Assembly (NCBI GenBank): GCA_905178155.1
Contig: CAJINV010000018.1
Coordinates: 1,338,190-1,402,189 of the forward strand
Length of the DNA: 64,000 bases
DNA from: Amoebophrya sp. A120
Taxonomy: Eukaryota > Protista > Dinoflagellata
Direction: 5' to 3'
Every line of letters begins with the position of its first letter. Within the stretch, counting starts at the first letter, position 1. The notes below the pieces were generated by a model. The model saw nothing but the letters and a program-made list of their open reading frames with translations. It was not told the origin of the DNA and ran no database searches. This document shows positions 16,763 to 37,700 of this stretch, in pieces. The translations under genes were made by a program, and so were the position numbers.

Positions 16763-19700
16763 ATGATGCCCGCGACGAGAACCCCGGTTCCCGGCCTGCC
16801 GGTTTCCTCGGAGGCGGGGCGGACCAACCGGACGCTGTATGTGTTTCGCAAGACCGATCTGCGGCTGCTGGACAACCGCGCGCTGGCGCACGCCCGGCGG
16901 CTGATGGCCGCGGCGGCGGCGCGGAACGAGAGTCCCACGATCACCTTTGTCGTGGTGTTGGACGTTGCACAGGAGTGGAACCGCACCGGGGAGGTGTCCC
17001 TGCTCGCGAGCGCGGGGCACCAGCGCCGCCGGTTTTACCGGGAGTGCTGTGAGGACCTGGAGGAGTCGCTGCAAAAGTTGGAGTGGTTGCGAAACATCCA
17101 GAAGAACCGCATCACCACCACGGTGAAGGCCGGATTGCCGCGTTACCAGACCACAACCACCGCTTCGGGAAAGACTTCATCAGCTTCCGCGTCCGCTGCA
17201 AGCGAAGTAGTAGAAGATGGGGATAAAAAGGACAATGAGGATCTCGTCCCCCGCCCGCGCCTCAGCAGCCAGGCGAACTCGTTTTTTAAAGACCAGTCCC
17301 CCCGGGTGAGCCTGGAGCTGGCCAGCAACAGAAACATCAAGCGACTCGTCAAGCCGCCGCCAGGTCTGGAAGGAGAGATCGATGATCTGGAGGCCCGTGT
17401 CGCAAGTGTACAACGGGAGACTATATCAAATGCAAAAATGTCTGGCTCTGGGAGGATGGAAGTGGAACTTGTGATGCGTCCTGTGGGTCACACAAAAGTC
17501 TGTGTTGCGTGATCACCAAAAGTTGTCCTTTTTTGACCAACATGAGCGGGTGTTTCTCATGCAGTATAGGCATGATAGAAACTTCGCAGAATCTGTCATG
17601 CTAGGTCCTGCATTCCAGACCTCATGGGGCATGGAAAATATGCATGACAAGTCTGCACTCTTCCAGACCCAGACATTTTTGCATTTGATAGACTAGCAAA
17701 AATTCATCCAGTAGTTCTTGTGCCAATTCGTGTTCCACCTCCGGTGGACTCAATACTGCATCTTCCAATAATATTACCCAGCAGCCCGCTTCGTCCAGGA
17801 ACAAGATGAACACGAAGAACAGTAGAACCCCGTCGACGACGTCCAACATCATGCAACTCCCCACGGTGGCTGGTGGAGCCGCTGGTGCCTCATCTTCTCT
17901 CACAACAACTACCTCATCTTCGTCCTCCCCCCCCGACCTGCTCTTTTGCTCCGAGCTGGATTTCGTGTCGTTTCTGAAGGAAGTGCACAGTTTCTTCGAC
18001 CACATTGTTTGTACGAAAGAGGTGGGTGTGCGCGAGGACCGGCTGGAAAAGGAGGCGAAAGAGTTCTGCGAGGAAAAACTCCACGTCGTGATGGATGACA
18101 CCATGATCGCTGAGGAGTGGTTTCCCTTTCGCCTGGACTTCGCCAACACCGCGAAGTACATCAGTTCGTACCCGCAGAAGTACCAGAACCAGTGGTACTC
18201 CCCGCCGCGGCACCGCGAAATGACCTACGAGGACCACCGGCCCCGGCTGACCACGATCAGCCCCGCCGCGCAGATGCGGCTGGGGCGCACCCTGCCCATG
18301 ATGAAGGACACCTACACCGGGTTCCGGACCTATTTGGAGCAAAACATGGACCGCTATCAAATGAAAAATCTCCCCTCCCCATATCGAAAGGGAAGTCTGT
18401 GATGCTGTATTTGCGTACACAAATCAGCTTTGTCTTGCAGTAGAGCACTGCAGGCAGATGCAAAGCCCCGGAAGGGGTGGCTTGAGGTAGTCACTTAGCA
18501 TGGCAGACGTCTGCCGCATTGGCGCAGCAGCGTGACAAATCGCCTGCGAAATGCGGCGGAAGCTCTGGCGTTGCCCTCTTGCAAGACAGACTCGATTTGT
18601 GACCACAAAGCCGCAGCGCAAATTTTGAAAAGCACGCCTTTTATTCGATATGGGGAGAGGGGATTTTTCCTCACAATAACCGCGACGAGCAGAGCCACAC
18701 GCTGGGGGTGTACCAGTTCGTGGACCGCTACTGCCCGGATTTAGCGCTGTCTCTCTCCGTATCAAATGCAAAAATGTCTGGATGTCTGGAAACTTGTAAT
18801 GCTGCGTTGGGAGCAGTGAATGCTCTGTAATGCACCACCAAGCATGAGAAATATCTGCGCTTCTTTGTGTTGCGTTTTTCGCATGACAAACTGCGTTTCC
18901 TCGGTGCTGAGACAGGTTCCCTCGGTGCTGAGACAGGGAGTTTGCACAGAGTTATTTCTACCTAGATAACAACCTACTCACGTCGCAGCCGTCCCAGGAG
19001 TTTCGGTTGTTGTCTCTCGGTAGAAATCACGCTGTTCAAAATTTCTGTTTTGGAGTTTACCGGGTACGCGGTTAAGAGTTTGTCGACGTAATTTACAAAG
19101 GGACGCCCTGCCCTTAGTTTCCCAGCATGACAAACTGCGTTTTTGCATGATCGGCAAAAGGGTCTCTTCTTGGACACGCATCACAAACTTTTTGGTCATG
19201 CCAGACAAGCTAGCATGACAAATCTCGCAATTTTCCAGACCCAGACACTTTTGCAGTTCATACTCCGCCAAGGAGATGGAGTCCGTGTACGGTGCCCGCC
19301 GCGATTTTGGGCAGCCGTGTTTGGATAGCGACGGGGAACTATCAAATGTAAAAATGTCTGGGTCTGGAAGAATGGAACTTGTGATGCTGCATTTGGATTC
19401 CAGAAGAATCTGTAGTGCATCGGTACCAAGAGAAATGTAATGCTTGCTACGCGGAGAGGGCATTTGTCATGCGGAATAGGTGGGAGTGTATAGAGTGTAT
19501 AGAGCTGGTTTTGAAAGCCAAAGAGCTCGTTCTGAAAGTCAAAATAATATTCTGGACTAAGTTGAAAAAGTCTCCGTTTTAAAACTCGGCACTGGTAGTT
19601 CGTTGTATGTTTTCGTTCTCCGTCTTAAGTACGTCTTCAGCAACGTGGCAGTTTCGGTTCGTAGTATCATTAAGTTAGTAACATGAGATTCGTATCGAAA

Positions 19701-22700
19701 GAAAGAATCAACGAAAGAAGAAAAATTGAAACTCAAAAATTCGGTTCGTCTTCGTGTGTATCTCGTCTCGTAACGTCTTAGGTTGTTTTAGTTTTATACA
19801 CCTCTGCCAGGTGTCGACACTGCACCTGCCATTCGGCAGGAGGAGAGTCGTATACTTTTTTGTCTGCATGGGCTTACTTTTAGAAGACTGCGATGGGAGG
19901 TCCCGCGGGTATTGGTGAGCTAGCACCCTCGGGCTTTACCCTGCATGACCAGGGCCCTCCCATGTGAGCACTTACTTCGTACCTCCAGGCTTTTGGTTGG
20001 CATCCTTGGTCGGATGTTCCTGTTCTTGGTTGAAGTAGGACCCCGTGTGGCTGTAGCGTCTTCCTGCTTGCCCTGCTTAGTTTTTTGGCCGCGCCCCGTC
20101 GAACTTCGTACAAGAAAGCTTTCGTCTCTCCCTCGTACAAATCTCGTCTCCCCTTCCCGACGTAGTTAAACCGGTTATTCACTCCTTTACCTTATCCCCC
20201 CCCTTGCACAGCTACAGCTATCACGCTTTGTTATTTTAGAAATTGTTTTAGTGTTGGTTAAGTGGTTACTTTCATATGCTTTATTGGTTTTAGTAGGGCA
20301 TGATGCCAACGGGGACGGACAGCCCTTAGAACTCCGATGTCATGAAGGGTTTGCTATTGCTGTGGTGGCAGTAATTAAGCAGCTCTATTTCCTTTTCCTT
20401 TCCAAAACTTCCAGGGTTTCGTGTGTACTTCGTATAAGAACATGACACTAAGCTCTCACAAGTCGTGCTGCTGGTTGGTTCGCTTCACCTTCGTCCACTC
20501 AAATCAAACGGTCTCGGTCGGTCGTACGTAAAGTTTCGTTTAAAGTCTAAAATTGCACTAAGTATTCATATCATCAGTTTGTATGCAAGGACCAATGCGA
20601 ACAAAATACATAATATAAATATCTGCATCGCGGGTCGTACGGAACCGCGCGGGGTCGTAAACGGGTAGGGGACGAACAGGCACCCCAAAACGAAATTACC
20701 TACCTGAACCGAAAAAGTTTTTTCTTGCCGACCAGTGCGGATTGCAAAATGACTACTACTACCACGGATGAGGATGCGCTATTACACTACCACGGTCTGC
20801 GCACGAGTACGGACGTACACGTACACCAAGCAACGTTAAGCCCTCAACCAGTGCAGGCCCCCGTAACAGAAGGCATCTATCAGTTACGCACAGCTGTAGC
20901 AGCACCGATCCAACCGTCCCAACCCCTTCCCCCTACTTTTCGCGGTTTACGGACGTCTATTGCCGGAAACGGACTCAGGGCTTCGTACACACGAAGACCA
21001 CTAGATTCCGCTGCTATCATTCAGCCCTATACTGACGCGGTTGCTACGGACACACAGCCGGTCGGTGCCGGAGTTCCACAGCAGGTAACGCGACCTCCGT
21101 TCCGCCTTCTGTCTACAGAATCCCAAGAAGACCGGTGCAGCTGGGAACCGGGAAAGGAGTACTGGACGTTCAGTTGGGGCACGCTCCGCTGGCAGTACGA
21201 CTTCTTTCGGGGTACTTGGCGATACGAGGACTCCATCCACCGAGCCAACCAACAAATCCAGAGCTGGGAAGACGCGGGTTTTCGGGTCGAGAATGGCGAA
21301 ATACGGCCGCAGTCGTGATCCCTTACTCTAGCTGGTTTACAGCTCAATATCTATTGTTCGTCTCATGTAGTTTTTCAAAATGGCTTCGCACATCCAGCGC
21401 CCTCTCATGGCGGAGCCGAACCGAAATTCTACAGTAGCTCGGGCGAACATCATCGGTCCTCACGTCCCGGCTTCTCGACATGTTCCTTCTCTGTCGCTAC
21501 AAGTGCTACAGAAGCCGTCTCGGCCATTAGCTCCGAGCCCCCCGATGGAAAACTTCCTACATGCGGTGAGCAACTCGATTGTAGCAGTCGCGGAGTTTTG
21601 TGATGTACAACAATTGTACACAAGCGACTTATTCGCAATAAAAAACGATTTCAAGAAGGAGGGTTTGCCGGTGGCTTGGATGGCGGATTATTCGATACCG
21701 CTGCAGATGAAGGCGGCATCCTTCAAAAGACACGTCCTGGCCCCCAACAATTGGTACTCGGATCGACTACGACCGGACTTGTTTACGCTGGACCGTGCCC
21801 ACATGTTGCAGTGTTGTCGCGCAGCAAAAGGCAACCCATGCAGTCTTTGCTCGTCAGCCTCCTCCGACCGTTTCTTACAGGTAAGCGGCAAGCTGCTAGA
21901 AGTGCGGGCTCGTGAGCAAAGGTCCTGTGATGAAGCGGGTAACACTAGTCTGGTCTACTTGCGACGGTGCAGCTGCGGACTATCATACGTGGGCAAGGCC
22001 CACACGGGCGCCGGAGCGGGGACGAGATTCCATTCCCACGCTAACCATGCCGAGCGGGTGTGTTTGGAAGCAGAAGGCCACCCGATGTATGCGCGCCAGA
22101 AGCTGTACCTTAGCCACGCAGTAACAACGGATGTTTTGTTCTGTATGGACAAAGTGGAAGCCAACCGCACCGCTACGCTTCCAGACGGCTCCACCATGTC
22201 ACAAATAGATGCATGGGAGTCGTTTTGGATAGTCGCACTCCGCACGTACTACCCCTGGGGTTTTAGCCTGGAGTTTAAGGACGTAACGCATCCTTCGGCT
22301 CCTCGCCGTCGGCCCTGCCCCGAAGATGCTGCGAGCATGTGCCGCCGGCTCTCAGAGCAGGGCGATGTATTAAAGGTGCAGCGTCTGCAACGTAACCTCA
22401 AGCGATACGTGGCGGCGGTGCAAGCAGGCAACAACAACTTCCTTCCAGATACGGCTCTGGTACAGACAACTCACATCGGTACCCCAGGACTGATTAGTCC
22501 CAATCCGGATGCGGGCCGCATCTTCCGAGAACCTGAAGCACCTCAAGCGGGGACTCCAGGTACCCAGGACGTTGGAATTAGTTGCACGCAGGACGTCGGA
22601 ATTAGTTGCACGCAGGAGTCTGACGAGGTCCTGCCTGCACCTCACACCAGTGCTTGTGTACCAGTCCCGCGGGTACAAGTTTTCGTGGGTAAGCGCAAAT

Positions 22701-25700
22701 CCCAAAGACTAGTAGCAAACGAGCCGGAACTAAAACGCCGCAGTATGCTGGCTCCGGATCAAAAAACTCCCTTACGACCATGCCGGCTGTCTATGCGTCC
22801 TCGCCTGGTAGAGCTGCCTGCTGAAGCTAAAACTCCGCTCCTGTCTGCTGGCCCAGTAGTGTCGCCCTCCCGCAAGAGCAGCATGGTGCAAGAGCTTTTT
22901 CGACGTAAATTCAGCACGGTGCGGGGTAGTGATGATAAACGAACGGCACAGCGGATGATCTTCACTCCTGTAGAAGAAGCCAAAGACCACTTGCTCTCAC
23001 TCGATGATCCAGGTGCGGCAAACTTACCTCTTGCCCAGACGGAGCATCCGGATGCGGCCTTCTCCACGAAACTACCAAAGACTGCAGCGGAAGTCAAAAA
23101 AATCTTACTGGCACTCGTGTGGTTATTCTTCACACTCGACCCGCCTCAGGATTTTGCAGCTTCTGGTAGGTGGTTGCCGGTACCTTCATGGCACATTGGA
23201 GCAGCGAAATTTAACACCATTTCTTGGCTCCTCAAGATACTTGCCGGTTGTAGCAAGCAGCTGCTGCGAGCACTACGACTCCACCTGACCACTGCGTACG
23301 TACTACCGCAACAACAGCTGTTCCTGCTCCAGGAACTGGTCGAAAGCCGCCTACGCTTGACGAAGTTGGCGGATGACAAGCAAACCCGGGATGGTAAGAA
23401 AGCGGTGATCTTCTTTTACCACCACAAAGTGGTCGACATGCTCAATCTTCGCTCCACATTCAGACATGTGTTGAGCGACAGATTCTTAGCATTTACTTAC
23501 GGCCCCCCGGTGTGCTTGACCACCTTCAGCCTGAGACTGAAAACCATCCCCGCATCCTGCTCTTCGTTGAAATGTGCTTGCGCAGATTATCGTCGCTACT
23601 TCGACGATGGATGCACGTGGGGAGGACATTTGGCGATGCCCGCCACGGCTGCGAACATCCAGGTGTTGTGCGGACCTGCTTTCGATTCTGTGGTGTCTTC
23701 CAAGGTGGCACTGCTAATGCGGCCGAAGTTCCGGGTCGAGCAAAAGTTTTCCGCTACGAAATTGCTCGAGCGAGTGCCGATTGCAGATCAAGAGTTGATC
23801 CAGGACGTACGCCACTTTTTCTGGTGCAATGCGGTGTCCGAAGGCGACGAGCAACTAGCCGAAGTGGACTGGAACAGACACTGCGGACGGATCTGCAGCC
23901 CCGATTCCGGTTCCCGACGCCAACGGCCGCGTAGTAGAGCGGTCCGCTGCGTCTACGTTCGAATGGGGCAAGTTCACCACTGCTTTCGACGTAGTACGGA
24001 ACCTCCAGCAACTCTTCGTTTTTGGGTACTACGACAAAGCTACTTCTACCACCTGGATGATGTGCAAAAGCTTGTGCGCGGCGCTGTTGATGGAGGATCT
24101 GGGAATGGCTGGTCGTGGGTCTTTCCCGACTGACACTAGCTCCGATTACCACCGTGCAGACTTCGTAGAGCCGCTTCCTAAGACCAGTGTCCCTGCTGCT
24201 TCCGCAACAGTTACGTCCCCGGTGGCAGAGTTGTCGAAACCGAAACAGCCTGCAACTTTTCTGCCGATTTCCTCGCAGGCTTCCGCAAGTAATAGGGTAG
24301 TACGGATCGAGGAGAAATCTTCGGGTAATCAGCTGGCGGTAGCTCCAGAAATACTTTCCAGTCGCTCGGACGTGGAACGGAGGGACGGGTCCTCACATCA
24401 GCCTACTCCGGCTAATAGAGGACTTTACCTGCAACGAAACAAGTTCGGGCTGCCAGCGACAACGTCGGATAAGATCGAAGCAATGGATCGTGATCTGATC
24501 GAAGAAACGAAGAATGAACTACACAACGTGAAAAACTTGATGCAGTTCGTGCTCCGCAAAAGCGACCGACTCCTTAGCCTGGGCCAGCTCACTTCCACCG
24601 ATCAACCGCACGCGCTGATGCAAGCCAAGATCAAGCTCCATGCAGAAATAGAGGCGGCTATTGAATTGGCCCTGGAGAATTTGGAAAAAGAGCAAGCTGG
24701 CACCAAGATACTCCGGCAACTCGCAGAAGCAGAAGCAGCAAGAAAAGCAGTGCAAGCGGAGCTAAAACAAAACATACCCAAGGCGTCGGTGCCGTTAGCC
24801 GCCTCGGTTAATGCAGTCCATGTCCGCCCCTTCCCCTCCGCGCTGTCAGGCAAGCGGCAGTCGTTGATGTGGAAAATTAGTGCACATGCCGGTTGGAGAG
24901 TCATCTCTAAAAGCCTTTTAAGAGGAATTAAAGGCGTTGGCTGTGCTCTGGACATGCATCGCGCGGCACAAGCCGGACTCGAAAAACTAGCGGTTTTTGA
25001 TCTGCGAGCGGGAATTACGCAAACCGTTACAAAACAAGTGCTGAAGCCCGTTGCGCAGTCGGGCTGCGTTGTTGCCTTCAAACATCAGCAGCTGTACGCG
25101 TCGACCGCAATCCTCGCCAAAGCGCCGATCCTCCAGTTGAGCTCGGGCCCAGAAAAATGCCAGTGGTTGTCGCCTATCTTCGTGCTCTCAAATGCAGTAG
25201 TTCAGATACTGTTTAGAGACGAAACGAAGAGGAACTTCTTACAATGGGCTGCTGAATCGATCAGCTTAGGTTTGTTCTCCAGTAAGCTGAAAGAAAACCC
25301 GCTTCCTGTTACGGCCCTAGACCGGTGGATTAGTAAACACGAAGTGGCGGAACTGCTACAAATGGGGATGAAACCGGCAGGCGACACGGGTGACACCAGT
25401 ACGACTCACACCTCCTTGCTGCTGGATGCAGACCCACTATCGGCGTTCGAGCTTTGGCTCGATGATGATACCACGGAGGACCCCGGTCCCCCTCCACTGT
25501 CGATCATCGGGGCGCAGCCGCTAGATACATCGGCCAGCACTAGTAGTAACCTGGTCCCAGGCCCGCACCTGGGCGTGGCAGTTAACCTCCTTGACGTTGC
25601 GGCTGGACTTGCTGTAGACGAGGAAGATGAGGACCTGCAGGTGGAGTCGAACCTATTCAACGACAGCAGCGTCAACGCTAGCAACAGGTCGTTACTAAAC

Positions 25701-28700
25701 AGTGCGGCACACAAGTCAAGCGAGGACGTGGTGTATGCGCGTCCGGCTCCGGAACAGTGGATGGATGGTTCACACAGGATGCCACCGCGTTGTGCTACAC
25801 CACGGCATGCCGATGCGGATACTCGGGCCCAAGATTCCCCTCCCCGATCACCACCCACACCTGCGGCTAGCAGAAGCTCAACTTCGTCCCGTTCCAGTTC
25901 AACTAGCAATTCCGCTTCGACAAGTAGCTCTTCTTCTACGCCTACCCTTACGTCATCGGAGTCAGAAGATCTGCCTCCTCCGCCGCCACCAGTGTTCAAC
26001 CGAGCCGAGCTCGCAAAACAAATCCCAAACTTAAACTCACCTAGTTGTTGGATCAAGCAAGGGGTAGATAATCGGGGTTGCAAAATTCGTCCACTGCTGC
26101 CGATATGGCAAGCGAGGCGCAGTTCTTCATTTTTAAGTTCTGAATTTCCCCCGGCGCAGCAGTCGCTGCACGAGGTGTACAAGGCGACATCGGCGGAGCA
26201 GATCAACGAGATAGTGGAGCGACTTAGCAGTTTCGCCCCGGCACTGCATGCCAAGGTCAAGCAGCGCCAAGCGTCTGCACATCCGGCGTATTATGCTGTC
26301 ATCAAGGGCCACAAGTTCCCGGCCTATAAAATGCGATTTATCGCAGCGGCTACGGACAAAACTGTTCTTCACGCCCCTGGCAAAGTCTTGCACTTGATTT
26401 TGTCGGCAGTGATGCAAGAATTCAAGGCCCGCGTGTGGCCTGGGGCGTGGAGCGTCGAGAGCTCGGAAGAGGCGCTCTCGCGGGTTACGGCGGGAGGGTT
26501 CGCGGAATTCGACGGGTATGATTTTGAACGATTGTACACCGGTCTTGAACACTCTTTCCTTTGCCACAACCTCCACCAGTTGAACAGCTGTGTCTTCACG
26601 GCTGGCGGTTTCCAGTCCGTTGTTCTGGGGTACGACAAGAACCGCAAAGGGCCCGAAAAGGAATTTGCGTTCCTGTCGCGGGATGCTCCGTCCTCTTCTT
26701 CGTGGTCTTTGTCGGACATCGACGCTTTGGTGCGTTGGTGCTGCGAAAGCTGTTACATCGGCATTGCAGACGTGCTTTTTTTGCAAGTCCGGGGTATGCC
26801 TATGGGCATTACCCCGGCACCGAGGATGGCGGACGGTGGGTTGTCCTGGAGCGAATGCGTCTTTGTTACGTCCCCAGCAGGACAGCAATGCCGTTTTTTG
26901 CAAATTCTTCGATATCTCGACGATTTGCTCTCTCCTGTGCAGCTTCCTCTCCACCAAATATACCCCCGGGCTTTAGCCTGCAAGCCCGAAACGATCGGAA
27001 CGGTTACCACCACCTTCCTTGACTTTTTCCTCGACGCCTCAATTCCACGCCGCCTGTTGTACTGTATGTACGACAAGACACGAGTCTTTCCTTTTTATCT
27101 ATCGAAGTTCTCGTCGTCGGCCAGCGCGGTGCATCCCGAAGCGCACCAATCGGCGTTCTGCAGCGCTGTAATCCGGGCGTATAAGAGGAATTACTTGGTT
27201 GTTCATTTCCTCCGGGACGTGGTCGAGCTCCTGGCTCGGTTCACTTTGAACGGCACTTTTCGGAGCTCGTTCCCGGGCAAAGCGTGCAAGCTGCTCGTGT
27301 CAAGACACGAAGTCCCCAAGTGGTTTACAACCGAAAAACTGGTCTCCACACTAGGGGACTGGATGAGGAAAATGCAGTCCGAAATCGCGACAATTCTGAA
27401 CCCTTCCTGGCAGCGGTTCCAGGCCACGGTTAGGGAGTAGCATCAGCCTTTTCGGTCGAGCAGAGGTTTTGCACAGTTACGGGCAGTTTTTTCGGTCGGG
27501 CAGTTGCTTTTGCACGGTTCCTAGTAGCCGGGTCGGACAATGATGGTTCACACGGTACAGGACGGCTCGAAGATTCCAAAAAGTTTCATTACAAACGTAG
27601 TACACAGTAAAAGTCTCAGCCGTAAAGTTTAGTAAGGAAAAAAAAGCCGTAGCTGCTGTGCAAAGTTGTAGTGAAAAAAGTTTCAAGAGCAAGCTCTTTC
27701 TTTTTCTTTTAACTTGGCTCCACTTATCGACCCTGGTAGTAAGTAAAAGAGTAGGGAAAGAAAACTAGCTTAAATACTCTTCAATGTTTCTATTCCGACA
27801 CGTGGCCGTCGACTTCGAACAGGTAGCCGAAAACTAAGCAAGCGCAAAACTAGTCTTAAAGCTTTTTGATTTCTTTGCGGAAAAAGGATTTGGTGGTAGG
27901 CGCCCCTTCACAACTGGTTGTTGGGTTAAAAAACAAAATAAACACTCGGAAGACGCCCCGCGAAACCTCTTGTAATCCGTCCGCCGTAGGTGAGAAAGAA
28001 AAGCATGACCTTTAGTAGTCTTGTCAACAGACGTTATTGAAGCAAAACAAAGCTGCAAGAGCACAACGAGCAGTACGCTACTGCACACACTTAAGTTACC
28101 GCTTCAAATATAGATATACCAAACTGCATTAGTAAGTTTCTCATGCCCACTACACTTAGCTACTAATTTTTTCGAATCAGCGTTAGTTTTAAACTTTGAG
28201 CAACTTTATCTCTTAATTAAAATTAGCATTTCTGGTACTATATTTAAGTAAACACACGACAACACACAAATAAACATGACGCAGTAGATATAGTATTCTG
28301 TGATTGTTGTTGTAGTTGCGCCGTATAAGCTTGTACATCGCATTGGACACACTGCGCAAATTCTGTGCATATTTTTCTTTTCACATTGATAAGAGTGAAC
28401 AGTTGGTCGAGATACGTTGCTACCACGAAATCGAAAAAAGCGACGCAACTCGTCTAGTTCCTCCTGTAGTTCCACTCGTAACGGGTCGTATTCGAAAGTA
28501 GTCAGTCGAAAGTTGATAAGTCGAAGGAGTAAAGAGTTTCGCGGACGTGCCTGAGTCGGTGGGTCGTTGACACGCTATATAGTAAAAGTTGAAAGTACTA
28601 AGTAGACCGTACAGAGTAGCAGTATGACATATAGTAAGGCAAAAGTAAGAGGCTACTTAAAACAGTAAAAGCTAGTAGCTTAGCATTAGAAATGTCTTTT

Positions 28701-31700
28701 CCAAGAGAAGAGCATGTGTTTTTTGGAGTCAAAGAGTTAGATTGGACAGTAGCAGAAGAAAGATATTTTCTTAGATCCAACCTTCCGGGGAGCTGCTTTT
28801 ACACAGTTCCATCCCCGTCGCGCGTCTCTAACTGGCAGGACGACGACTACGCACCGTGGCAGTTACCGCGCCCTCACCGATTTCAACGACCTGCTCCTCT
28901 TCTTGCAGAACTTGGTCCGGATCCATCCTTGCTGAGAACATTACGAGACCCAGAACAGCTGCCAGGGAGATTATCTTTTGACACGGCCCACGCGCTCGAC
29001 ATCCCGCTTCCGTTCCACTCCCACGAGACGAAACACGGATGGTTCTCCGAAAATAAATTCTACGGCCAGCACCTGTTTTCTACGCCGCCTCTAGTACGTG
29101 CTAGACGCGAAGATCTTCGCCAGGAACGAGCCTGGGTCAGGGCGTTCAACAGAAACTTGTCCTCCCCAGTACCGTCGTCACCACCATCGGTGCACGCCCT
29201 ACCCGCTAACACGGGGCCGCGACCAGTATCACCGGAGAACCACACCAGGGTAAACGGTGTCAGCCCGTTTCTACCGTCATCGCCTGACCATCCAGTGGAT
29301 CGCACCGACTGGTCGATCTTCAAAATCGAACGTATTTTAAGCAGTCCTGCTGCCCTCCTGGCTACCACGGTACGCGGGCGGTAAGATGGCGTTAGCACAC
29401 AACAGCGGCTCCATCTTTGAGTTCAACCTGCATGAATACCGCAGGTTAGTGGGGATCAGTAGTAGCTCCGTACACGAATCACCGTTGCCGCAACTAGCTG
29501 AACAACCGGAGCCTTCGCCGGCGCAGTCCCGGTCGGCGCGGGAGTCGGTGGCTAGCAGCATCAAGTCCTTCGGGGAAAACGTTTGTGTCGTGCTAAATTT
29601 TGACGATGCAGACTTCCCGATGCCGTCGTACGAAAATACGGTCAGATTCGTTCCGAGTAATCCCTTCAGGTGGAAACAGCAGGCACTCCATGTACTCGAC
29701 GAAAGCATTGCGATACAAGATGCAACCATGGAAGCCGCCCGATCCCCGAGCCGGAGTTTTGAGCTGCTAGACTTTCCACCATCCCCTCCGTTCGGCTACA
29801 GCCCGTGCCGATATTTCGCTTGCTTACAACAGTACCAGGACGACATCATCATCCAAGTCCCGCAGCAAGAAAGTATCAATCCGTTCCTGATGTCCCCCTA
29901 CTCCCCGCTGCTGTCTAACCCATCGATTTTTCAGATCGAGCAGATCGAACTCGACGCGATGGGCTGGCTCCCGTACACCCGCCACTTCCCGGACCCCAGC
30001 CCCCGTCAGCTGAGTACTTACGAGATTAACCGGTCCGAAAGTGCCAAACGCAGACGGGTAGGTTCTCCGCTGCAGGCCACGCTACAAGTAAACATTTCTC
30101 ACGAGTGCCAGCAGTTCGTGGCGTTCAACGAACAACTTGACGAAAACAATGTTTTACGGCAAAATCGACTCCAGTTAGCAGCTAACCAGGAGGAGGACAG
30201 GGCACCGGGATTGACTCAGAAAAATGCGGTAGCCGAGCGAAGAGTTTTCTCACCGTCGCCTACCCCGTCCGAATTGTCCCTGATGGCTGCGGGACGGCTG
30301 TGACGCGTATCATTTCAAAATGAACCACGCAGAACTCCATCACGCGATTTGGTCCGCCTCATCTTCAAACTTCTTTCAAGTTCCTGCTCGACTACGTGAT
30401 GCAATTTACGACTACTAACATCTTACGAAGAATACGACGCAAACATTACGAACCACGAAAACACAAGAACTTGTTGAACGACGCGAATGACACCTCCAAG
30501 CCAAGCAGTCTAATACCAGCACCCGAAATGCAGACTTCACGGCAGCAGACTTTCTATTCGTTGTTTTTCTTTTTTCATTCTGAACATCTTTTTCATGTTA
30601 ATGCATATTACAATGGTTAATGCCCAGTTTCAATGTAGGTAAATCTGTATATTAAGGTCTTGGACTAGAATAAAAGAAACAAACGGGTCAGAATGAAAAA
30701 GAAAGACTTCGTCTTGCTTGCATATATGCATTTTGTTCGCAGAGCGGTATTATGTGGTCCTTCGATGCATGAGAGTTAACATGCACCGAAATAACAAAAA
30801 TCGTAACAGGATCAAAGTGTATAGAGCTGGTTTTGAAAGCCAAAGAGCTCGTTCTGAAAGTCAAAATAATATTCTGGACTAAGTTGAAAAAGTCTCCGTT
30901 TTAAAACTCGGCACTGGTAGTTCGTTGTGTGTTTTCGTTCTCCGTCTTAAGTACGTCTTCAGCAACGTGGCAGTTTCGGTTCGTAGTATCATTAAGTTAG
31001 TAACATGAGATTCGTATCGAAAGAAAGAATCAACGAAAGAAGAAAAATTGAAACTCAAAAACTCGGCTCGTCTTCGTGTGTATCTCGTCTCGTAACGTCT
31101 TAGGTTGTTTTAGTTTTATACACCTCTGCCAGGTGTCGACACTGCACCTGCCATTCGGCAGGAGGAGAGTCGTATACTTTTTTGTCTGCGTGGGCTTATT
31201 TTTAGAAGACTGCGATGGGAGGTCCCGCGGGTATTGGTGAGCTAGCACCCTCGGGCTTTACCCTGCATGACCAGGGCCCTCCCATGTGAGCACTTACTTC
31301 GTACCTCCAGGCTTTTGGTTGGCATCCTTGGTCGGATGTTCCTGTTCTTGGTTGAAGTAGGACCCCGTGTGGCTGTAGCGTCTTCCTGCTTGCCCTGCTT
31401 AGTTTTTTGGCCGCGCCCCGTCGAACTTCGTACAAGAAAGCTTTCGTCTCTCCCTCGTACAAATCTCGTCTCCCCTTCCCGACGTAGTTAAACCGGTTAT
31501 TCACTCCTTTACCTTATCCCCCCCCTTGCACAGCTACAGCTATCACGCTTTGTTATTTTAGAAATTGTTTTAGTGTTGGTTAAGTGGTTACTTTCATATG
31601 CTTTATTGGTTTTAGTAGGGCATGATGCCAACGGGGACGGACAGCCCTTAGAACTCCGATGTCATGCGGAATAGGCACCAAGAAGCTCTCAAAAAATCTA

Positions 31701-34700
31701 TCATGCTAGGGCATGCATCACAGACATCCGGGCTCATGCAAAACGTGCATGACAAGTGTCAGAATCTTCCAGACCCAGACATTTTTGCATTTGATAGGAA
31801 CCTACGCAGCGGCTGCACATGGTGCACAGTATATCAAATGCAAAACTGTCTGGGTCTGGAAGAATGCAAGTTTGTCATGCTTGTCTGGCATGACTCGAGA
31901 ATCTGTGTTGCATAGGCCCGAAAGAGCCCTCTTAGCTGTCATGCGAAAAGGCAGTTTGTCATGCGGAATACATAAGACATGGCAGCCACAAAATTTGTCA
32001 TGCATAGCTGCGTATTGTGGCGCGTCTATTATTCACTTTTAACATTACAAGTTTCCAGACCCAGAGCAGACATATTTGCACCTGATACAGTAACCAGTGG
32101 TACAACGGGCAGAGTTATCAACTGTAAAAATGTCTAGGTCTGGAAACTTGTGATGCTGGGTGGCGTATCATGAGGAGGCCACAAGTGCTGGCTCAGCATG
32201 GCAAGTTTCTGAGCTTCTAGGTGCTATGCCTATTCTGCAAGACAAACTGCGTTTCTGCATGAGAGAAAAGTGGCGCTCTTGGGCAATGTGCATGACAGAT
32301 TTGAGAGTCATGCCAGACACGCATGACAAACATGCATTCTTCCAGACCCAGACATTTTTGCATTTGATAAGAGTCCGCTCGACGCAGTGAAAAACGTTTT
32401 GCCGCAGGTCTTTGTCACCCACGCCCAATTGGTGCAACCGGAAGTTGTAGATGAAAGTAGTGGTGCTGCAACTTCTACGTCGGGCTGCTCGGGGCACAAC
32501 AACCAGGTGGACGCCCTGATGATCGCCGCCGGGAGGATGAATTCTGCTAAAAACTACAAGCACTCGGCTAGTGCAACGACAGCACGACATATCGCAAGAA
32601 AAAACTGTTTCACTGTAAACTTGTCATGCAGAAAATGTATTTCACAAGTGTTTGTCTTGCTACACATGCAAGACAGTGGCTTTTTAGCTTTGTTTTCCCT
32701 TAGGATTCTCGCATGGCAAATTTTCTCTGTGATGCAGAACAAACTTGTTATGCAAAACCTGCAAAATCATCACAGTGAAGCACTTTTTTTGCACGATACC
32801 ACAAACGGTTGGCGCTGGTCCTCCGCGAGTGCAAAAGGTGTTCAACACGGACTACAAGTTGTATGAAAGTGCACACCTCCCCCTCCCCCTCATTTGTCAT
32901 GCAAACTTCCAAATCCTCCCTTTGCCTGTTGGTACTGTTTGCATGACAGATTGTTCCGGACTCCGAAACAGCACTACAATCCCCTAGAAATTTGTCATGC
33001 AAAAGCTGCATCTTTGCCAGCGCTTGTGTTGCTGTTCATGCAACACAAATGAGGGGGAGGGGGAGTTGTGCACTGTCATAAGTTGTCCAAGTCGACGTTC
33101 GCCCTGGAGCCGAAAACGAGCATGGTCATGGTCCCTCTGGACAAGATTTTGTTGGAAAACGAGCCGCAACTGTTCTTCGAATTCCAAGACACGCTGAAGA
33201 TGTGGCCGGCCATATCCTGAGTAAAAACGTCCCCACCCCAGAGTTGTCATGCAAATGTGCAATGACAGGAACAGTTGTAATGCGCAGCTCCATGAGGGGC
33301 ATTTCCAGTTGTGTTTTGGAATTTGTAAATGTAATGCTGTAAACAGGACGAGAAAGTGGCTTTCTCATGCGGCTTCGCTTGCCAACCAGCACTACACTGC
33401 AGAGGGAAACTTGTCATGCGCAGCTCCCAAAGCTTGGAGATTTGTGTTGCTAGATTCCCAACTTGGCTATAGGGTGGGGACGTTTTTCCCCAGGATAGGC
33501 GAGCAGCGAGGAGAACTGGAAAGGCGTGATCGGGACCGTAACCGAGCCGCCGGAGGCGGAGGACCGGAGGCAGTGCCTGGCGGTCGGGGAAGACTCGGTG
33601 GCGGGAGATGACCGGTACTACTACCGCGGCGGCGAGCGCTCGGGGCTGAAGCGTCTGCAGTACCACTTCTGGGAGACCGACCTGGCCTCGACCTACAAGC
33701 AGACCCGGAACGGGTCACTGGGAAACGAGTACAGCACGAAATTTTCCCTCTCCTTGTCGACCGGGTGCGTGTCCCCGCGGACCATTCTGCACGAGTTATG
33801 GATTGCAACTATGTTGCCTGGGTCTGGAAAGTTGTCATGCGTATGTCCGAATCATACGCAAACTGTATTGCGAAGCCGCGCATGACAAGTTTCTGAGCGA
33901 CTCTATCTAGCGTTAATCGCATGACAACTTGCCTTTTTGCATGACAAAGAATTGGCACTGTAGCGCAACGAGCATGACAGACTTTTCTGTATGGTCGACC
34001 AAGCATGACAAACCTGGCAATCTTCCAGACCCAGACATATTTGCATTTGATACGAGTTGGCCAAGTACGAGATCGACCGATTCCGAATATGCACTGCAAA
34101 AGTATCGTACTAGTACGTAAAAATGGCATTACAAATTGGCGCAGCATTACAAATTAGATTTGTAATGCGGATTTGACTTGAGAAAAAAATTTGTAATGCA
34201 TGACTGCGATTACTGCTAACTAGTACGATAATTTTGCAATTCATACCGAAACGACAGCACCTACTGGATCGTTTTCGAGCTGCTGTGGCGCGACTTTTTG
34301 CACTTTGCCATCCGCAAATTCCACGAGAAGTTTTTCGACGAGGGGGGCATTACGGGGAAGCTGCGGAGCTGGGAGAGCTGCACCCTCCGCCGGGACCGGA
34401 ACTACCTGGCCTTATCCATTGCAAAGATGTCTGGGTCTGGAAACAAGTTGGAACTTGTAATGCTGGTCTTACACTCCTGTGAGATCTGTATTGCATGACC
34501 CAGAAGAGTCGCAGCCACTCTTGTCATACAAAAACGCAGTTGTTTCTCATGCGGAGCGCGTATGAGGAAGTGTTCTACAAATTTGTCATGCTCTCGTGCG
34601 TGAGGGAGCGTTTTCGTCATGCACATTTTAGCATCACAAATTTATTCCAGACCCAGACATATTTGCATTTCATAGGCCTGGTGCAAGGGCGAAACGGGGA

Positions 34701-37700
34701 TCCCCTTCATCGACTCGGCCATGAAGGAACTCAAAAAGATATCACAAGGAAAAATCCCCCCTCCCCATATCAAAAGGAAGTTTCTGATGCTGGATTTGCG
34801 TATGCAAATCAGGTTTGTCTTGCAGTAGAAGACTGCAGGCTCCTGCCAAGCCTGAGTAGAGAGCTTTTGGCCTGGGCGCTTAGCATGAGAAACGACTAGG
34901 CTGTAGGCCCAACAGCATCACAAGCCGCCTGCATAATGCGGCAGAGCCTGTGGCGTTGTCTTCTTGCAAGACAGACGTGATTTGTGGTCTCAAATCAGCA
35001 CGACAAATCTTCGGAAGCATACCTTTTCGATATGGGGAGGGGGAGTTTTTCCTCTCAATAAAAGACCGGGTTCATGTCGAACCGGGGACGGCAAAACGTG
35101 GCCTCCTTTCTCATCTACAATCTGAAGATCGACTGGCGGTTCGGCGCGGAGTACTTCGAACACGCTTTGATTGACCACGACACGGCCGCGAATTACGGGA
35201 ATTGGCTCACGATCGCGGGGATCGGGTTCCAAACCCGGGATAACATCTTTAACGTGGTGAAGCAAAGTAGACAATACGAACAGACCGGGGCACACATGCG
35301 GTACTGGCTGGAAAAACCCATGGCGGAAGCCAAACAGGTATAGAACATGAGTATAGAGGTTTTTTGGAGCACCTACGTACAAAATTGAACAAATTCAAAC
35401 TTACCGCCGATGGTGATCATCATTTTACACGGTAGGAATATTATCAAGCACGAGGATCGGTTGACTTCAAAAATCGGCGCTGTGACAATCGGCGTTGTTC
35501 CCAAGTTCTTTCGCAAAACGTGAAAAAAAAGTATACCGCAACTACATTTCCACTAATCTAGGTGATGTTGCGCATCGCGAGAGAGGAGAAGGAGAACAAT
35601 GCGGACGGCATATCATATGTAAAAACGTCCCCATCCCATAGTCAAGTTGGGAACTTAGCAACACAAACCCAGAAGTTGTGGGAGCCACGCATGACAAGTT
35701 GCAGTCCGTAGTGTCGTGCATGTGAGCAAGGACAACCGCATCACAAATCCATCTGCTTATCCTGTTAGCAGCATTACAAATTCCAAAACACGAATGGAAA
35801 TGCCTCTCTTGGGGATGCGCATTACAAATGTTCCTGTAATCGCAAATCCGCATGACAACTCCGGTGTGGGTACGTTTTTACACAGGATACGGCAGTCCCA
35901 AGTTGAAGCCCACGGCGCTGCCGCTGCCGGACATCGAGATTCGCACGTACATATGCAATGCAAAAGCATCGTACTAGTATAAATCGCATGACAAATTTTT
36001 TCAGCATGAGAAAGAAAATTTGTAATGCGGATTTAACCTGAGAAAGAAATTTCAATTTGTAATGCATGAATGCGATTACGATTAGTACGAGTGCGATACT
36101 TTTGCACAGGATAGTACACGAAGACTTCGCCCCCGGAGCCCGAGCAGGACAAGGAGGACGCGTTTGTGCTGCTATCAAGTGCAAAAATGTCTGGGTCTGG
36201 AAGGATGTAACCTGTGATGCGCATTTCAGAACACACAAAAATCTGTCATGCATGGGTAGCAAAAGCTGCCCACTTTCTGTCACCAAAATGGGGGATTTGG
36301 CATGCGGGTTCGGCATTGCGGAAGCTTCTCGAAACCTGTGATGCTAGAGCTTCCATGCCAGACCTTCCGTGTCATGCAGAAACAGCATGACTCTTCCAGA
36401 CCCAGACATATTTGCAATGCATAGCTGCGCATGCTGTACCACACCCCGTGGGAAATCCAGGACGAGCGGATCCGCGAGAAAATTCCCGCCGTCTACAAGA
36501 CGCCCATCATCGTGCCCAAGGACCATTTTCTGTACAAGGTAAGCGATTTTGCGGAGGACGCGCCACCGGTCATCGTGGGGCGGAAAGCGAAAAAAGCGTA
36601 CTACGCGCTGCTGGCCGAGGCACGGGAGCAGGCGAACAAAGAGAACGAGGGGCTGACTACAACCGACGGGGAGAACATGGAACAACAGGAGAATCAAGGG
36701 ACGGGAGAAAATATCAGTTCACATCAATCTGGGGGAACCACGACCACTGCATCGACGGCGGGTGGGGAGAAAACTCCGGGAGGAAGCTCGCTGAAAGGGG
36801 TATGACCTGCTCAAACGTTACAATCTCAAACGTTACAGTAGAATTTGGAAATCTGTGATGCAAGAAGTGCATGATCTAGCCAAGTCGCATAGGACTGCGC
36901 ATGACAAGATCCGGAGTCCCAAACCGCACTACAATCTGCCGAAATTTGTGTTGCAGAAAGTAGAGTGGTCTGCGAGTCTGTGGAGTGGTCTGCGAGTCTG
37001 TCATGCTCATTATGCAAGACAAATTCCAGACTCTATTGTAACGTTTGAGATTGTAACGTTTGAGCAGGCCATAAGCGGAAAAGATCGTGGTGAATGCCGA
37101 CGCGGAGGAGGAGAGAATATGGATTGCAAGAAATATGTCTGGGTCTGGAACACTGCAACTTGTCATGCTAAGTCTGGACGATGCAAAAATCTGTGTTGCG
37201 TGATTGCCAGAAGCTGCCCACTTTTGACCAACGTGCGAGGGAGTTTCTCATGCAGGACAGACATGATAGAGTTCTCACAGAATCTGTCATGCTAGGTCCT
37301 GCATTCCAACCCTTGGGCGTCATGGAAAACCTGCATGACAAAAAACCGTGGAGGGGTCTTCCAGACCCAGACATATTTGCGTTTGATAGAGAAGCCGAGT
37401 GAACTACCAGGACAAGGAAAACAACATCCTCGGGCTGCACCAGCAGCAGGTGAAGACGACTTCGTCGAGCAGTGCTCTTCTTACCAAAACTCACAGTAAG
37501 ACGCTGACGCCCACGGCCGGATCTACAGCTACTTCCAAGACGTTGGCGAAGAATAATAATAAAGGAACAGCAGCTGCTGCTGCACACGAGGACTTTTATA
37601 ATTATTCGACGAAGAGCAAGAACAAGCTGCACAACCACAACTACAGTGGGGGGAACAATCGCGGGGGGTCTTCTGCTGGGTACAACAAAGCCACCGACTC

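What the first reader, a model, noticed from the sequence alone, without database searches (positions are those of the whole stretch)
18881..31675. Candidate new system: Penelope-like retroelements that target introners through the shared CATG motif
Two independent retro-insertions sit inside adjacent introners. Each TSD begins with the introner motif: TGTCATGCggaatagg (16 bp) and GCATGACAaactgcgttt (18 bp). The large element's own sequence at that point is gatgtcatg (visible in the left repeat, 20336-20344), giving 7 nt of microhomology to the target. Both inserts share atcacgct, ggttaag and GGGACG-N4-GCCCTTAG just upstream of CATG, and both have 5' junction duplications. Inference: the element RNA carries a copy of the motif to anneal to the nicked target and prime reverse transcription. 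This parallels telomere-targeting PLEs, and the element then hides in DNA that is spliced out. Caveats: n=2, the motif is dense within introners, and selection alone favours intronic insertions.
Basis: partly seen in the sequence, partly recalled or inferred. Interest (0 to 1): 0.92.

Follow-up and report, generated by a model that had tools for sequence, protein, structure and literature searches.

The report
Retroelements that home into introner introns

Summary
The host is Amoebophrya sp. A120, whose introner introns are already published.

**What the window holds**
- The 12.2-kb insert (19481-31659) is a Penelope-like element with an N-terminal GIY-YIG nuclease, a C-terminal reverse transcriptase and pseudo-LTRs.
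- The 226-bp insert (18899-19124) is a short relative.

**Genome-wide pattern**
- Both carry the 3' module GGGACG-N4-GCCC-N-TAG, found 170 times in the genome against 4 for a reversed control.
- In 100 sampled copies there are three tail types: TGT[C/G/A]ATG, CATGACA and ATCAGAA.
- Each tail type lies at target sites that begin with the same 7 bases.
- 47 copies have duplications of 12 nt or more, against 1.3 per 100 in permuted controls. 38 of the 47 start exactly at the motif.
- Mismatch cases show the template RNA itself carries the motif.
- C-tail families use only C-variant sites. G-tail families use G or A variants and never C.

**Introns**
A transcript contig splices out the neighbouring repeats precisely.

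**Not shown**
Pairing as the cause of target choice is inferred, because conserved bases outside the pairing point to nuclease specificity as well. Splicing of the intron that holds the 12-kb element was not seen.

The scan reached a similar reading on other DNA of this genome (s1-872744, s1-868061).

The parts
18750..18898 (.). Introner A, left part (TIR-type repeat). Its last 18 nt (18881-18898, gcatgacaaactgcgttt) are the left TSD of the small insert.
   Evidence: Reconstructed A aligns with 15 other window copies of the repeat. TSD read.
18899..19124 (+). Small, 5'-truncated, non-coding retroelement of tail class B (226 bp). It has a 21-nt tandem duplication at its 5' junction (18895-18936), the 3' module GGGACGCCCTGCCCTTAG at 19100-19117 and the spacer tttccca at 19118-19124.
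   Evidence: The same 3' end occurs in L052, L058, L061, L078, L092 and L093. In the family the base before CATGACA is A; here it is the target's G.
19125..19272 (.). Right TSD of the small insert (19125-19142), followed by the right part of introner A, which ends with the TIR ...ttccagacccagacacttttgcagttcata.
19330..19480 (.). Introner B, left part. Its last 16 nt (19465-19480, tgtcatgcggaatagg) are the left TSD of the large element.
19481..19493 (+). Extra bases at the 5' junction: tggg plus a 9-nt duplicate (agtgtatag) of the start of the pseudo-LTR.
   Evidence: compared with 30816-30824.
19494..20344 (+). Left pseudo-LTR, which is the last 851 bp of a 5'-truncated upstream unit. It ends GGGACGGACAGCCCTTAG (20312-20329), then aactccga, then tgtcatg (20338-20344), joined directly to the head of the full unit.
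   Evidence: family D1, 99% identity. The tail-to-head junction also occurs in the C20 and C6 copies.
20345..31659 (+). Full unit of the autonomous element, 11.3 kb. The head is ...GCTATTGCTGTGGTGGCAGTAA. It ends in the right pseudo-LTR.
20725..21318 (+). Upstream ORF of 197 aa with no family match. Its C-terminal part is conserved in the C20 and C6 copies.
21380..24133 (+). ORF1, 917 aa. The GIY-YIG nuclease domain lies at about 21914-22285 (LVYLRRCSCGLSYVGKA ... TRFHSH ... WESFWIVALRTYYPWGF). A candidate CxC motif (KCACADY...GH...KFR) lies near 23570-23740.
   Evidence: hhalign against the GIY-YIG region of N-terminal-nuclease RT proteins gave probability 95.9%, E 6.4e-9. The CxC region reached only E 0.02. 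Pfam's own model does not hit.
24057..27440 (+). ORF2, 1127 aa. The reverse transcriptase domain lies at about 26184-27320 (K.HK.P..R.I, DFERLYT, QVRGMPMG, RYLDD, FLDF). Its frame is open from about 23859 and overlaps ORF1. In the C20 and C6 copies this part is continuous with the ORF1 frame.
   Evidence: hhalign E 5.3e-51 over 371 columns. HMM search found 6853 relatives.
28692..30303 (+). Two downstream ORFs (28692-29384, 230 aa; 29386-30303, 305 aa) with no family match.
30816..31659 (+). Right pseudo-LTR, with the module GGGACGGACAGCCCTTAG at 31634-31651 and the spacer aactccga at 31652-31659.
31660..31675 (+). Right TSD tgtcatgcggaatagg. Its first 7 nt (31660-31666) are identical to the element's own tail, so they are the stretch of microhomology.
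   Evidence: The element owns TGTCATG, as shown at 20338-20344.
31676..31806 (.). Introner B, right part, ending with the TIR at about 31796. It is followed by a 29-nt exon (31797-31825).
   Evidence: Exon and intron borders come from the transcript contig of run X2.
31826..32369 (.). Introners C (31826-32086) and D (32111-32369), separated by a 24-nt exon. Both are removed exactly in a transcript contig.
   Evidence: joints 31825>32087 and 32110>32370, same contig, depth 35.

Best explanation
The window holds two members of a group of Penelope-like retroelements of Amoebophrya sp. A120.
- The large one is an 11.3-kb autonomous unit plus a pseudo-LTR. It encodes an N-terminal GIY-YIG nuclease and a C-terminal reverse transcriptase (the Naiad/Chlamys domain order).
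- The small one is a short non-coding derivative.

All members share a 3' module, GGGACG-N4-GCCC-N-TAG. It is followed by an 8-nt spacer and then a 7-nt tail motif. The tail motif is the same as a motif (GCATGACA / TGTCATGC and variants) that is very abundant in the genome's introner introns.

Proposed mechanism:
1. Inferred: the nuclease nicks the bottom strand at or inside the motif.
2. Inferred, with indirect support: the freed DNA end pairs with the motif in the element RNA.
3. Shown by anatomy: reverse transcription starts there. This gives frequent 5'-truncated copies of 29-900 bp.
4. Shown: a second nick 10-23 bp away (median 17) creates the duplication that begins with the motif.

Because the motif sits almost only in introns, new copies land in DNA that is spliced out.
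For: **Identity of the elements**
- establish the RT and GIY-YIG homology and the domain order.
- Searches show the pseudo-LTR with tail-to-head junctions in all three autonomous copies.
- The host was identified.

**Targeting**
- The tail module occurs 170 times against 4 for the control.
- The 100 sampled copies split into class B (CATGACA tail, 58), class A (TGT[C/G/A]ATG tail, 33) and class C (ATCAGAA tail, 5).
- TSDs of 12 nt or more: 47 against 1.3 per 100 in the control, and 38 of 47 start at the first motif base.
- The C20 autonomous copy has the TSD TGTCATGCATTTATACG.

**The RNA carries the motif**
- Junctions L002, L005, L011 and L126 keep it.
- In L072, L077, L119 and L136 the 3' junction shows the element's version where the target's differs.

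**Pairing logic**
- Families with a C tail inserted at C-variant sites in 9 of 9 cases.
- Families with a G tail inserted at 17 G, 3 A and 0 C sites, although the C variant is the commonest in the window.
- G families accepting A but not C would fit a G-T wobble; this is my inference.

**Introns**
- A transcript contig removes 13 introns in 31.8-36.4 kb, five of them TIR repeats.
- All 24 motif copies in that stretch lie in those introns.
- At least 59 of 100 3' flanks match the TIR introner family, which covers about 10% of the window.
Against: - No experiment or read data show the RNA's 3' end or the nick site.
- The element had no depth in the one transcript run that covered the locus.
- Class B targets have G at -1 in 30 of 30 cases and T at -2 in 28 of 30 (background 35%). 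The element does not match these bases, so protein recognition contributes and could be the main determinant.
- Classes B and C differ over the whole last ~60 nt, not only in the tail. They could therefore recruit different proteins.
- All three autonomous copies have an interrupted main reading frame, so no source of active protein has been identified.
- In the only PLE studied in vitro, reverse transcription starts at RNA sites that are not homologous to the cut DNA (PMC11167929).
- No conserved RNA structure with covariation was found in the tail.
Confidence: 0.8

Rival explanations
1. Targeting is purely by protein. The GIY-YIG nuclease, with its zinc-finger-like motifs, recognises an extended site such as TYTG|CATGACA and nicks at a fixed place. 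The identity between tail and target is then a by-product, for example because transcripts read through into the flanking duplication, and it plays no part in priming.
For: - Bases at -1, -2 and -4 of class B targets are conserved but are not matched by the element.
- A canonical PLE starts reverse transcription at sites that are not homologous to the cut DNA (PMC11167929).
- Different tail classes come with different 3' modules, which could bind different proteins.
Against: - Tail-to-head junctions keep exactly the 7-nt motif and none of the rest of a flanking duplication.
- The junction position moves within the motif in mismatch cases (L072, L077, L119). That is expected from annealing and not from a fixed nick with non-homologous initiation.
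- Short non-coding families with G tails never use the commonest C variant. Only one close autonomous lineage (C tail) was found in the genome.
Confidence: 0.15
2. There is no targeting. Insertions are random, and only those in introns survive selection, so they merely appear to prefer introners.
For: - Intronic insertions are the least harmful.
- The genome is gene-dense, with very many introns (PMC7789003).
Against: - Selection cannot place junctions to the nucleotide. 38 of 47 duplications start at the first motif base, and the target copy of the motif is present upstream in each case.
- The motif occupies only a small fraction of intron sequence.
Confidence: 0.02
3. The repeated 3' module belongs to the introners themselves, or to another DNA transposon, rather than to retroelements. 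On this view the 'insertions' are recombinant introner variants.
For: - The flanks are rich in repeats.
- Introner families in this genome are diverse (PMC12130899).
Against: - Copies share a fixed 3' end and have variable 5' ends, from 29 to over 900 bp.
- They have variable-length duplications.
- The module is the 3' end of an element that encodes an RT and a GIY-YIG nuclease.
- Removing an insert and one duplication copy restores a full-length introner.
Confidence: 0.03

Closest known systems
Naiad/Chlamys Penelope-like elements with an N-terminal GIY-YIG nuclease (Craig et al. 2021, PMC8557442)
   Same: - Domain order: GIY-YIG, then a candidate CxC region, then RT.
- Pseudo-LTRs formed by partial tandems.
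- 5' truncation and odd 5' junction extensions.
- No hammerhead ribozyme.
- Short non-autonomous derivatives that share the 3' end.
- A marked insertion bias for particular sequences.
   Different: - The target is a 7-8-nt motif of transposon-derived introns. Published targets are (CA)n, (C)n or (TA)n microsatellites or 28S rDNA.
- The unit is 11.3 kb with extra ORFs, against the published 3.3-8.2 kb.
- The protein is about twice as long.
- The host is a syndinian dinoflagellate. I found no paper in the library searched that reports PLEs in this group.
- The clean duplications begin with a copy of the element's own tail.
Telomere-associated nuclease-lacking PLEs (Athena, Coprina; Gladyshev and Arkhipova 2007, cited in PMC8557442; details from my own knowledge)
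   Same: The 3' end of the RNA carries a short stretch matching the target repeat. It can pair with a free DNA end to prime reverse transcription.
   Different: - Those elements lack a nuclease and use chromosome ends.
- These elements encode a GIY-YIG nuclease and insert internally, with duplications.
Site-specific non-LTR retrotransposons whose RNA pairs with the target (R1, TRAS/SART) or that sit inside another transposon (Tx1L in Tx1D of Xenopus); from my own knowledge, not checked here
   Same: - Target-primed reverse transcription at one defined sequence.
- Homology between the RNA's 3' region and the target helps precise initiation.
- Another repeat family serves as a safe site.
   Different: - A different retroelement class and a different nuclease (APE or restriction-like, against GIY-YIG).
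- The target here is a dispersed short motif present very many times per genome and located in introns.
Poseidon PLE of Anolis studied in vitro (Frangieh et al. 2024, PMC11167929)
   Same: - Reverse transcription starts at a defined place close to the RNA's 3' region.
- Complex junctions are formed.
   Different: - There the initiation sites are not homologous to the cut DNA, and cleavage prefers AT-rich DNA.
- Here the initiation point coincides with 7 nt of identity to a specific target motif.

Membership tests
Penelope-like elements (PLE) | Reverse transcriptase of the PLE type | tested here: met
   - The profile of the window RT and its paralogs finds 6853 relatives.
- After other Amoebophrya strains, the best relatives carry Pfam GIY-YIG and RVT_1 together.
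- hhalign E 5.3e-51 over 371 columns.
- Pfam RVT_1 itself does not hit the window protein.
- No tree with named PLE, TERT and LINE references was built.
Penelope-like elements (PLE) | GIY-YIG endonuclease domain | tested here: met
   - ORF1 residues about 180-300 align to the GIY-YIG region of the relatives, with probability 95.9% and E 6.4e-9.
- The relatives' profile hits the I-TevI catalytic domain 1ln0 at E 8e-5.
- The Y..YVG, R...H, E..WI and P.G motifs are visible.
Penelope-like elements (PLE) | Pseudo-LTRs from partial tandem copies, 5' truncation and variable target duplications | tested here: met
   - Searches show the pseudo-LTRs and tail-to-head junctions.
- Insert lengths range from 29 to 896 bp, and duplications from 10 to 23 nt.
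Canonical PLE clades (Penelope/Poseidon, Neptune, Nematis) | C-terminal nuclease and a hammerhead ribozyme in the pseudo-LTR | tested here: not met
   - The nuclease is N-terminal.
- No hammerhead family was found at E up to 1 in 18000-33000.
Naiad/Chlamys clade (N-terminal nuclease PLE) | N-terminal GIY-YIG followed by a C-terminal RT in one protein | tested here: met
   - The order is EN (about 21.9-22.3 kb), then RT (about 26.2-27.3 kb).
- The C20 and C6 copies carry the ORF1 C-terminal part and the RT in one open frame of 1863 and 1742 aa.
- The window copy is split into two overlapping frames.
Naiad/Chlamys clade (N-terminal nuclease PLE) | CxC zinc-finger-like linker between EN and RT | tested here: inconclusive
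   hhalign places KCACADY...GH...KFR on the CxC...GH...KYR columns in the right order, but only at E 0.02 and probability 2%.
Naiad/Chlamys clade (N-terminal nuclease PLE) | Insertion-in-fingers domain in the RT, and phylogenetic placement inside the clade | not tested
- The AlphaFold model of the RT region failed (pLDDT 33).
Introner elements of Amoebophrya (Farhat et al. 2021) | Repeated introns with terminal inverted repeats and short direct repeats, removed from transcripts | tested here: met
- A transcript contig skips 31826-32086, 32111-32369, 33791-34051, 34408-34674 and 36168-36423 exactly, with 5-7 ambiguous bases at each joint.
- The description is in PMC7789003.
- The two interrupted copies (A and B) are members by homology only.

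The most novel reading that the evidence does not exclude
Target choice in these Penelope-like elements is programmed by RNA. A 7-nt sequence placed 8 nt after a conserved protein-binding module acts as a guide that pairs with the nicked DNA. Changing the guide retargets the element, as seems to have happened at least three times (TGTSATG, CATGACA, ATCAGAA). The variable base obeys pairing rules: C tails use only C sites, and G tails use G or A sites. That would make this a natural, compact, guide-dependent reverse-transcriptase insertion system, and a parasite that specialises on another transposon's introns.
Probability: 0.45. Interest if true: 0.85.

Novelty: new variant of a known kind. 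Interest (0 to 1): 0.75.

Why it matters
**For transposon biology.** It would add a new kind of safe haven to the known list of rDNA, telomeres, microsatellites and spliced-leader genes. The haven is a short motif carried by intron-generating transposons, so the retroelement is removed from host messages by splicing. This is a parasite living inside a parasite in a genome where introners create tens of introns per gene.

**For PLE mechanism, which is poorly understood.** It offers about 170 natural insertion events with clean junctions. These point to priming by pairing between RNA and target, in contrast to the non-homologous internal initiation reported for the one PLE studied in vitro.

**For engineering.** If the 7-nt tail really directs the choice of site, the system would interest people who design RNA-templated insertion tools.

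**For taxonomy.** It extends N-terminal-nuclease PLEs to syndinian dinoflagellates.

Tried and rejected
**Searches that found nothing**
- Pfam found nothing for any of the five ORFs or for the RT paralogs, even at E 10.
- A single-sequence PDB search found nothing.
- The word-indexed protein search with the RT region found nothing. With a profile it found only the genome's own protein. Only the full HMM search worked.
- Rfam gave no hammerhead or other real family. The miRNA-like hits are simply the introner hairpins.

**Structure**
- AlphaFold on the RT region with an 8-sequence alignment failed (pLDDT 33), so no fold search was run.
- RNAalifold on 17 class A tails gave only an invariant 3-bp GGG/CCC stem with no covariation. 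By eye there is a small hairpin (GGC-N5-GCC or GCC-N7-GGC) upstream, but the alignment is out of register and I did not test it.

**Data limits**
The autonomous partner of classes B and C was therefore not identified. One lead is an RT fragment at C2:3419618, which lies 5 kb upstream of a class B tail.
- Raw RNA runs X8-X10 had almost no reads on the stretch, so the element's transcript ends could not be seen.

Full report
**1. The observation**

- The large insert occupies 19481-31659 and is flanked by the 16-nt duplication tgtcatgcggaatagg (19465-19480 and 31660-31675).
- It has direct terminal repeats at 19494-20344 and 30816-31666 (99% identical over the first 300 nt).
- The left repeat ends ...gggacggacagcccttag aactccga tgtcatg (20312-20344) and runs straight into the head of the full unit. 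The 7 nt TGTCATG therefore belong to the element and are also the first 7 nt of the duplication.
- The small insert occupies 18899-19124 and is flanked by gcatgacaaactgcgttt (18881-18898 and 19125-19142).
- Both inserts share atcacgct, ggttaag and GGGACG-N4-GCCCTTAG.
- Both have anomalies at the 5' junction: a 21-nt tandem at 18895-18936, and tggg plus a repeated agtgtatag at 19481-19502.

**2. Host and introners**

- The only external hit of the word-indexed protein search was an unnamed protein of Amoebophrya sp. A120, on a contig whose length equals contig C2 of this assembly. The nearest other relatives are in Amoebophrya strains AT5.2 and A25.
- Introner elements with inverted and direct repeats are published for this genome (Farhat et al. 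2021, PMC7789003; Gozashti et al. 2025, PMC12130899).
- In the window the repeat with ends TATCAAATGCAAAAATGTCTGGGTCTGGAA...TTCCAGACCCAGACATTTTTGCATTTGATA occurs at least 16 times.
- Removing each insert and one duplication copy restores full-length members A and B.
- The repeat carries several copies of GCATGACA(A) and one CTTGTSATGC.
- TGTCATGC occurs 73 times in 64 kb against 2.6 expected.
- A 5161-nt contig of run X2 skips 13 introns between 31825 and 36424. It removes the TIR repeats 31826-32086, 32111-32369, 33791-34051, 34408-34674 and 36168-36423 exactly, and leaves exons as short as 24 nt. One intron is GT..AG on the + strand. X2 is only guessed to be RNA, but a contig with 13 exact skips can hardly be anything else.
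- All 24 copies of the motif between 31826 and 36423 lie inside these introns, which make up about 70% of that stretch.
- Copies A and B themselves were outside the stretch laid, so they are introners by homology only.

**3. What the large element is**

- Pfam, PDB and the indexed protein search saw nothing.
- Paralogs in the genome gave an alignment with RT-like blocks: K.HK.P...RPI, DF..YT.L.HS, Q..G.PMG, R(Y/F)(L/V)DD, FLD.
- A full HMM search with that profile found 6853 relatives, 179 of them below 1e-30.
- After other Amoebophrya strains, the best are proteins of about 900-1100 aa with the match in their C-terminal half. Eight of ten scanned carry Pfam GIY-YIG near the N-terminus, and seven carry weak RVT_1 matches, mostly below Pfam's own cutoff.
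- Profile-profile comparison of the window's RT region with 20 such proteins gives E 5.3e-51 over 371 columns.
- ORF1 residues about 180-300 align with their GIY-YIG region at probability 95.9%, E 6.4e-9.
- The relatives' profile hits the I-TevI catalytic domain and a group II intron RT in the PDB.
- A CxC-like stretch lies between the two domains in the right order but is not significant.
- No hammerhead ribozyme was found.
- Taken together, this is a Penelope-like element with the permuted Naiad/Chlamys domain order (Craig et al. 2021, PMC8557442). It is much larger (11.3-kb unit) and has extra unassigned ORFs.
- Only three close autonomous copies exist (C18, C20, C6). Each has its main frame interrupted differently: overlapping frames near 23.86-24.13 kb in the window, a 1.2-kb gap inside the nuclease domain in C20, and a frame break plus a stop in C6.
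- Some of these interruptions could be assembly errors. I built no repaired frame.

**4.

- The last 65 nt of the pseudo-LTR occur at least 25 times, in several diverged families.
- The pattern GGGACGNNNNGCCCNTAG occurs 170 times against 4 for the reversed pattern.
- I fetched the first 100 places (contigs C1-C8).
- They fall into three tail classes:
  - Class A: ...TAG + 8 nt + TGT[C/G/A]ATG (33 copies, including the large element's family).
  - Class B: ...TAG + 8 nt + CATGACA (58 copies, including the small insert's family).
  - Class C: ...TAG + 9 nt + ATCAGAA (5 copies).
  - Four are odd or chance matches.
- Exact duplications of 12 nt or more were found within 900 bp upstream for 47 copies, against 1.3 per 100 when flanks were permuted between loci.
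- 38 of the 47 begin exactly at the first base of the tail motif. Most of the rest begin 1-3 nt later.
- The upstream copy of each duplication is pure target DNA and carries the motif (for example ..ttg|CATGACAAAC.., ..aaact|TGTGATGC..). The motif was therefore in the target before insertion.
- Duplications of 10 nt or more are 10-23 nt long (median 17), and inserts range from 29 to 896 bp. This is the pattern of target-primed reverse transcription with 5' truncation.
- The C20 autonomous copy has the duplication TGTCATGCATTTATACG.
- Class C copies all sit at one site, GCAAATCCAGC|ATCAGAA, of a different TIR repeat.

**5. Does the RNA carry the motif?**

Three lines of evidence say yes.
- Tail-to-head junctions inside partial tandems keep the 7 nt and then continue with the element's head. 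This is seen in all three autonomous copies and in a short family (L002, L005, L011, L126).
- Where target and element differ inside the motif, the 3' junction shows the element's version:
  - L072: target CATGAT, junction CATGAC.
  - L119: target CACGACA, junction CATGACA.
  - L077: target CATGACA, junction CGTGACA, a variant shared with L076.
  - L136: target G, junction A.
- In the window's small insert the base just before the motif is the target's G instead of the family's A. This places the junction at the edge of the motif.

The junction can thus fall at different points within the shared bases. That is what annealing of a DNA end to the RNA predicts.

**6. Is pairing the cause of target choice?**

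This is inferred, not shown.

In favour:
- Families whose tails have C at the variable base (spacers AACTCC, ACCACC, CTCTCC) inserted at C-variant sites in 9 of 9 independent cases.
- Families with G inserted at 17 G, 3 A and 0 C sites, although TGTCATGC is the commonest variant in the window (72, against 44 and 29).
- Acceptance of A but not C by G families is what a G-T wobble would allow (my inference).
- The short families encode no protein, and only one close autonomous lineage was found.

Against, or qualifying:
- Class B targets have G at -1 in 30 of 30 cases and T at -2 in 28 of 30. The background for T before GCATGACA is 25 of 72 in the window (p about 3e-11). The element does not match these bases, so a protein reads a longer site.
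- A class B copy and a class C copy share a nearly identical body but differ over the whole last ~60 nt. Different tails may therefore come with different protein-binding modules.
- The Anolis PLE starts reverse transcription at sites not homologous to the cut DNA (PMC11167929).

**7. Do the copies lie in introners?**

- At least 59 of 100 3' flanks match the TIR introner family represented in the window, and 39 contain its terminal repeat within 170 nt.
- 74 of 100 have a paralogous flank among the sample. Only 18 showed no sign of repeat, and these include two internal junctions and three chance pattern matches.
- In the window that family covers about 10% of non-element DNA but holds 53% of the GCATGACA copies. 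The rest of the copies I could check lie in other introns.
- The elements therefore target the motif, and the motif marks introns. I could not test for a preference for introners beyond the motif itself.

**8. What remains open**

- Splicing of intron B with its 12-kb cargo was not observed.
- The element had no depth in the X2 contigs, and the raw RNA runs did not cover the locus.
- The autonomous partner of classes B and C is not identified.
- No conserved RNA structure was demonstrated.

**9. Novelty**

- Site-specific PLEs are known for telomeres, microsatellites and 28S rDNA (PMC8557442). Priming helped by pairing is known for some non-LTR elements and telomeric PLEs (my own knowledge).
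- Full-text searches found no report of PLEs in Amoebophrya or other dinoflagellates, nor of a retroelement aimed at an introner motif.
- Two earlier notes of this scan on other DNA of the same genome reached a similar reading. They are not independent evidence.
- I rate this a new variant of a known kind.

Noticed in passing
L039, L040, L046, L050, L088, L105 (oriented positions about 885-934 of each locus): Many copies are mini-insertions of only 29-34 bp. They consist of little more than GGGACG-N4-GCCC-N-TAG plus the 8-nt spacer, and they have clean duplications. Reverse transcription seems to stop often just past the conserved module.
   Followed up: partly
window 31826-36423: All 24 copies of TGTCATGC/GCATGACA in this stretch lie inside RNA-verified introns. 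These include introns that do not belong to the TIR family. The motif looks like a general mark of this genome's non-canonical introns.
   Followed up: partly
window 31797-31825, 32087-32110, 32801-32855, 34052-34082: The host gene has micro-exons of about 24-55 nt between consecutive introners, and most intron ends are non-canonical (AC..AT, AG..TA). Each joint has 5-7 ambiguous bases.
   Followed up: no
L041, L060, L082, L104, L136; window 18363-18388 and 18644-18669: A third tail class ends in ATCAGAA. It always sits at GCAAATCCAGC|ATCAGAA, next to the end TTTTGATATGGGGAGGGGGGATTTTTC of a different TIR repeat. The window holds one pair of such ends.
   Followed up: partly
L053 versus L041 (oriented 300-960): A class B copy and a class C copy share a nearly identical body, then differ over the last ~60 nt. 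This suggests that 3' modules are exchanged between elements.
   Followed up: partly
window 23859-24133; L141/L138 (C20); L140/L139 (C6): All three close autonomous copies have the long protein interrupted, each at a different place. The window copy has two overlapping frames, C20 has a 1.2-kb gap inside the nuclease domain, and C6 has a frame break and a stop.
   Followed up: partly
window 20725-21318, 28692-29384, 29386-30303: Three further ORFs of the large element have no family match. The first is conserved in the C20 and C6 copies.
   Followed up: no
L044, L045, L084, L093 (5' junctions): Several copies repeat a piece of the target flank or of the duplication at their 5' junction. This resembles the 'tail' extensions described for PLEs.
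   Followed up: no
L090 (C4:6613368) and L124 (C6:3827701): Two places on different contigs have the same insert, the same duplication and the same flanks. This is probably a segmental duplication, and I counted it once.
   Followed up: no
runs X8-X10 on window 31001-37000: Three raw RNA runs labelled with the same species gave almost no reads on a gene that is well covered in run X2. They may come from another strain or life stage.
   Followed up: no
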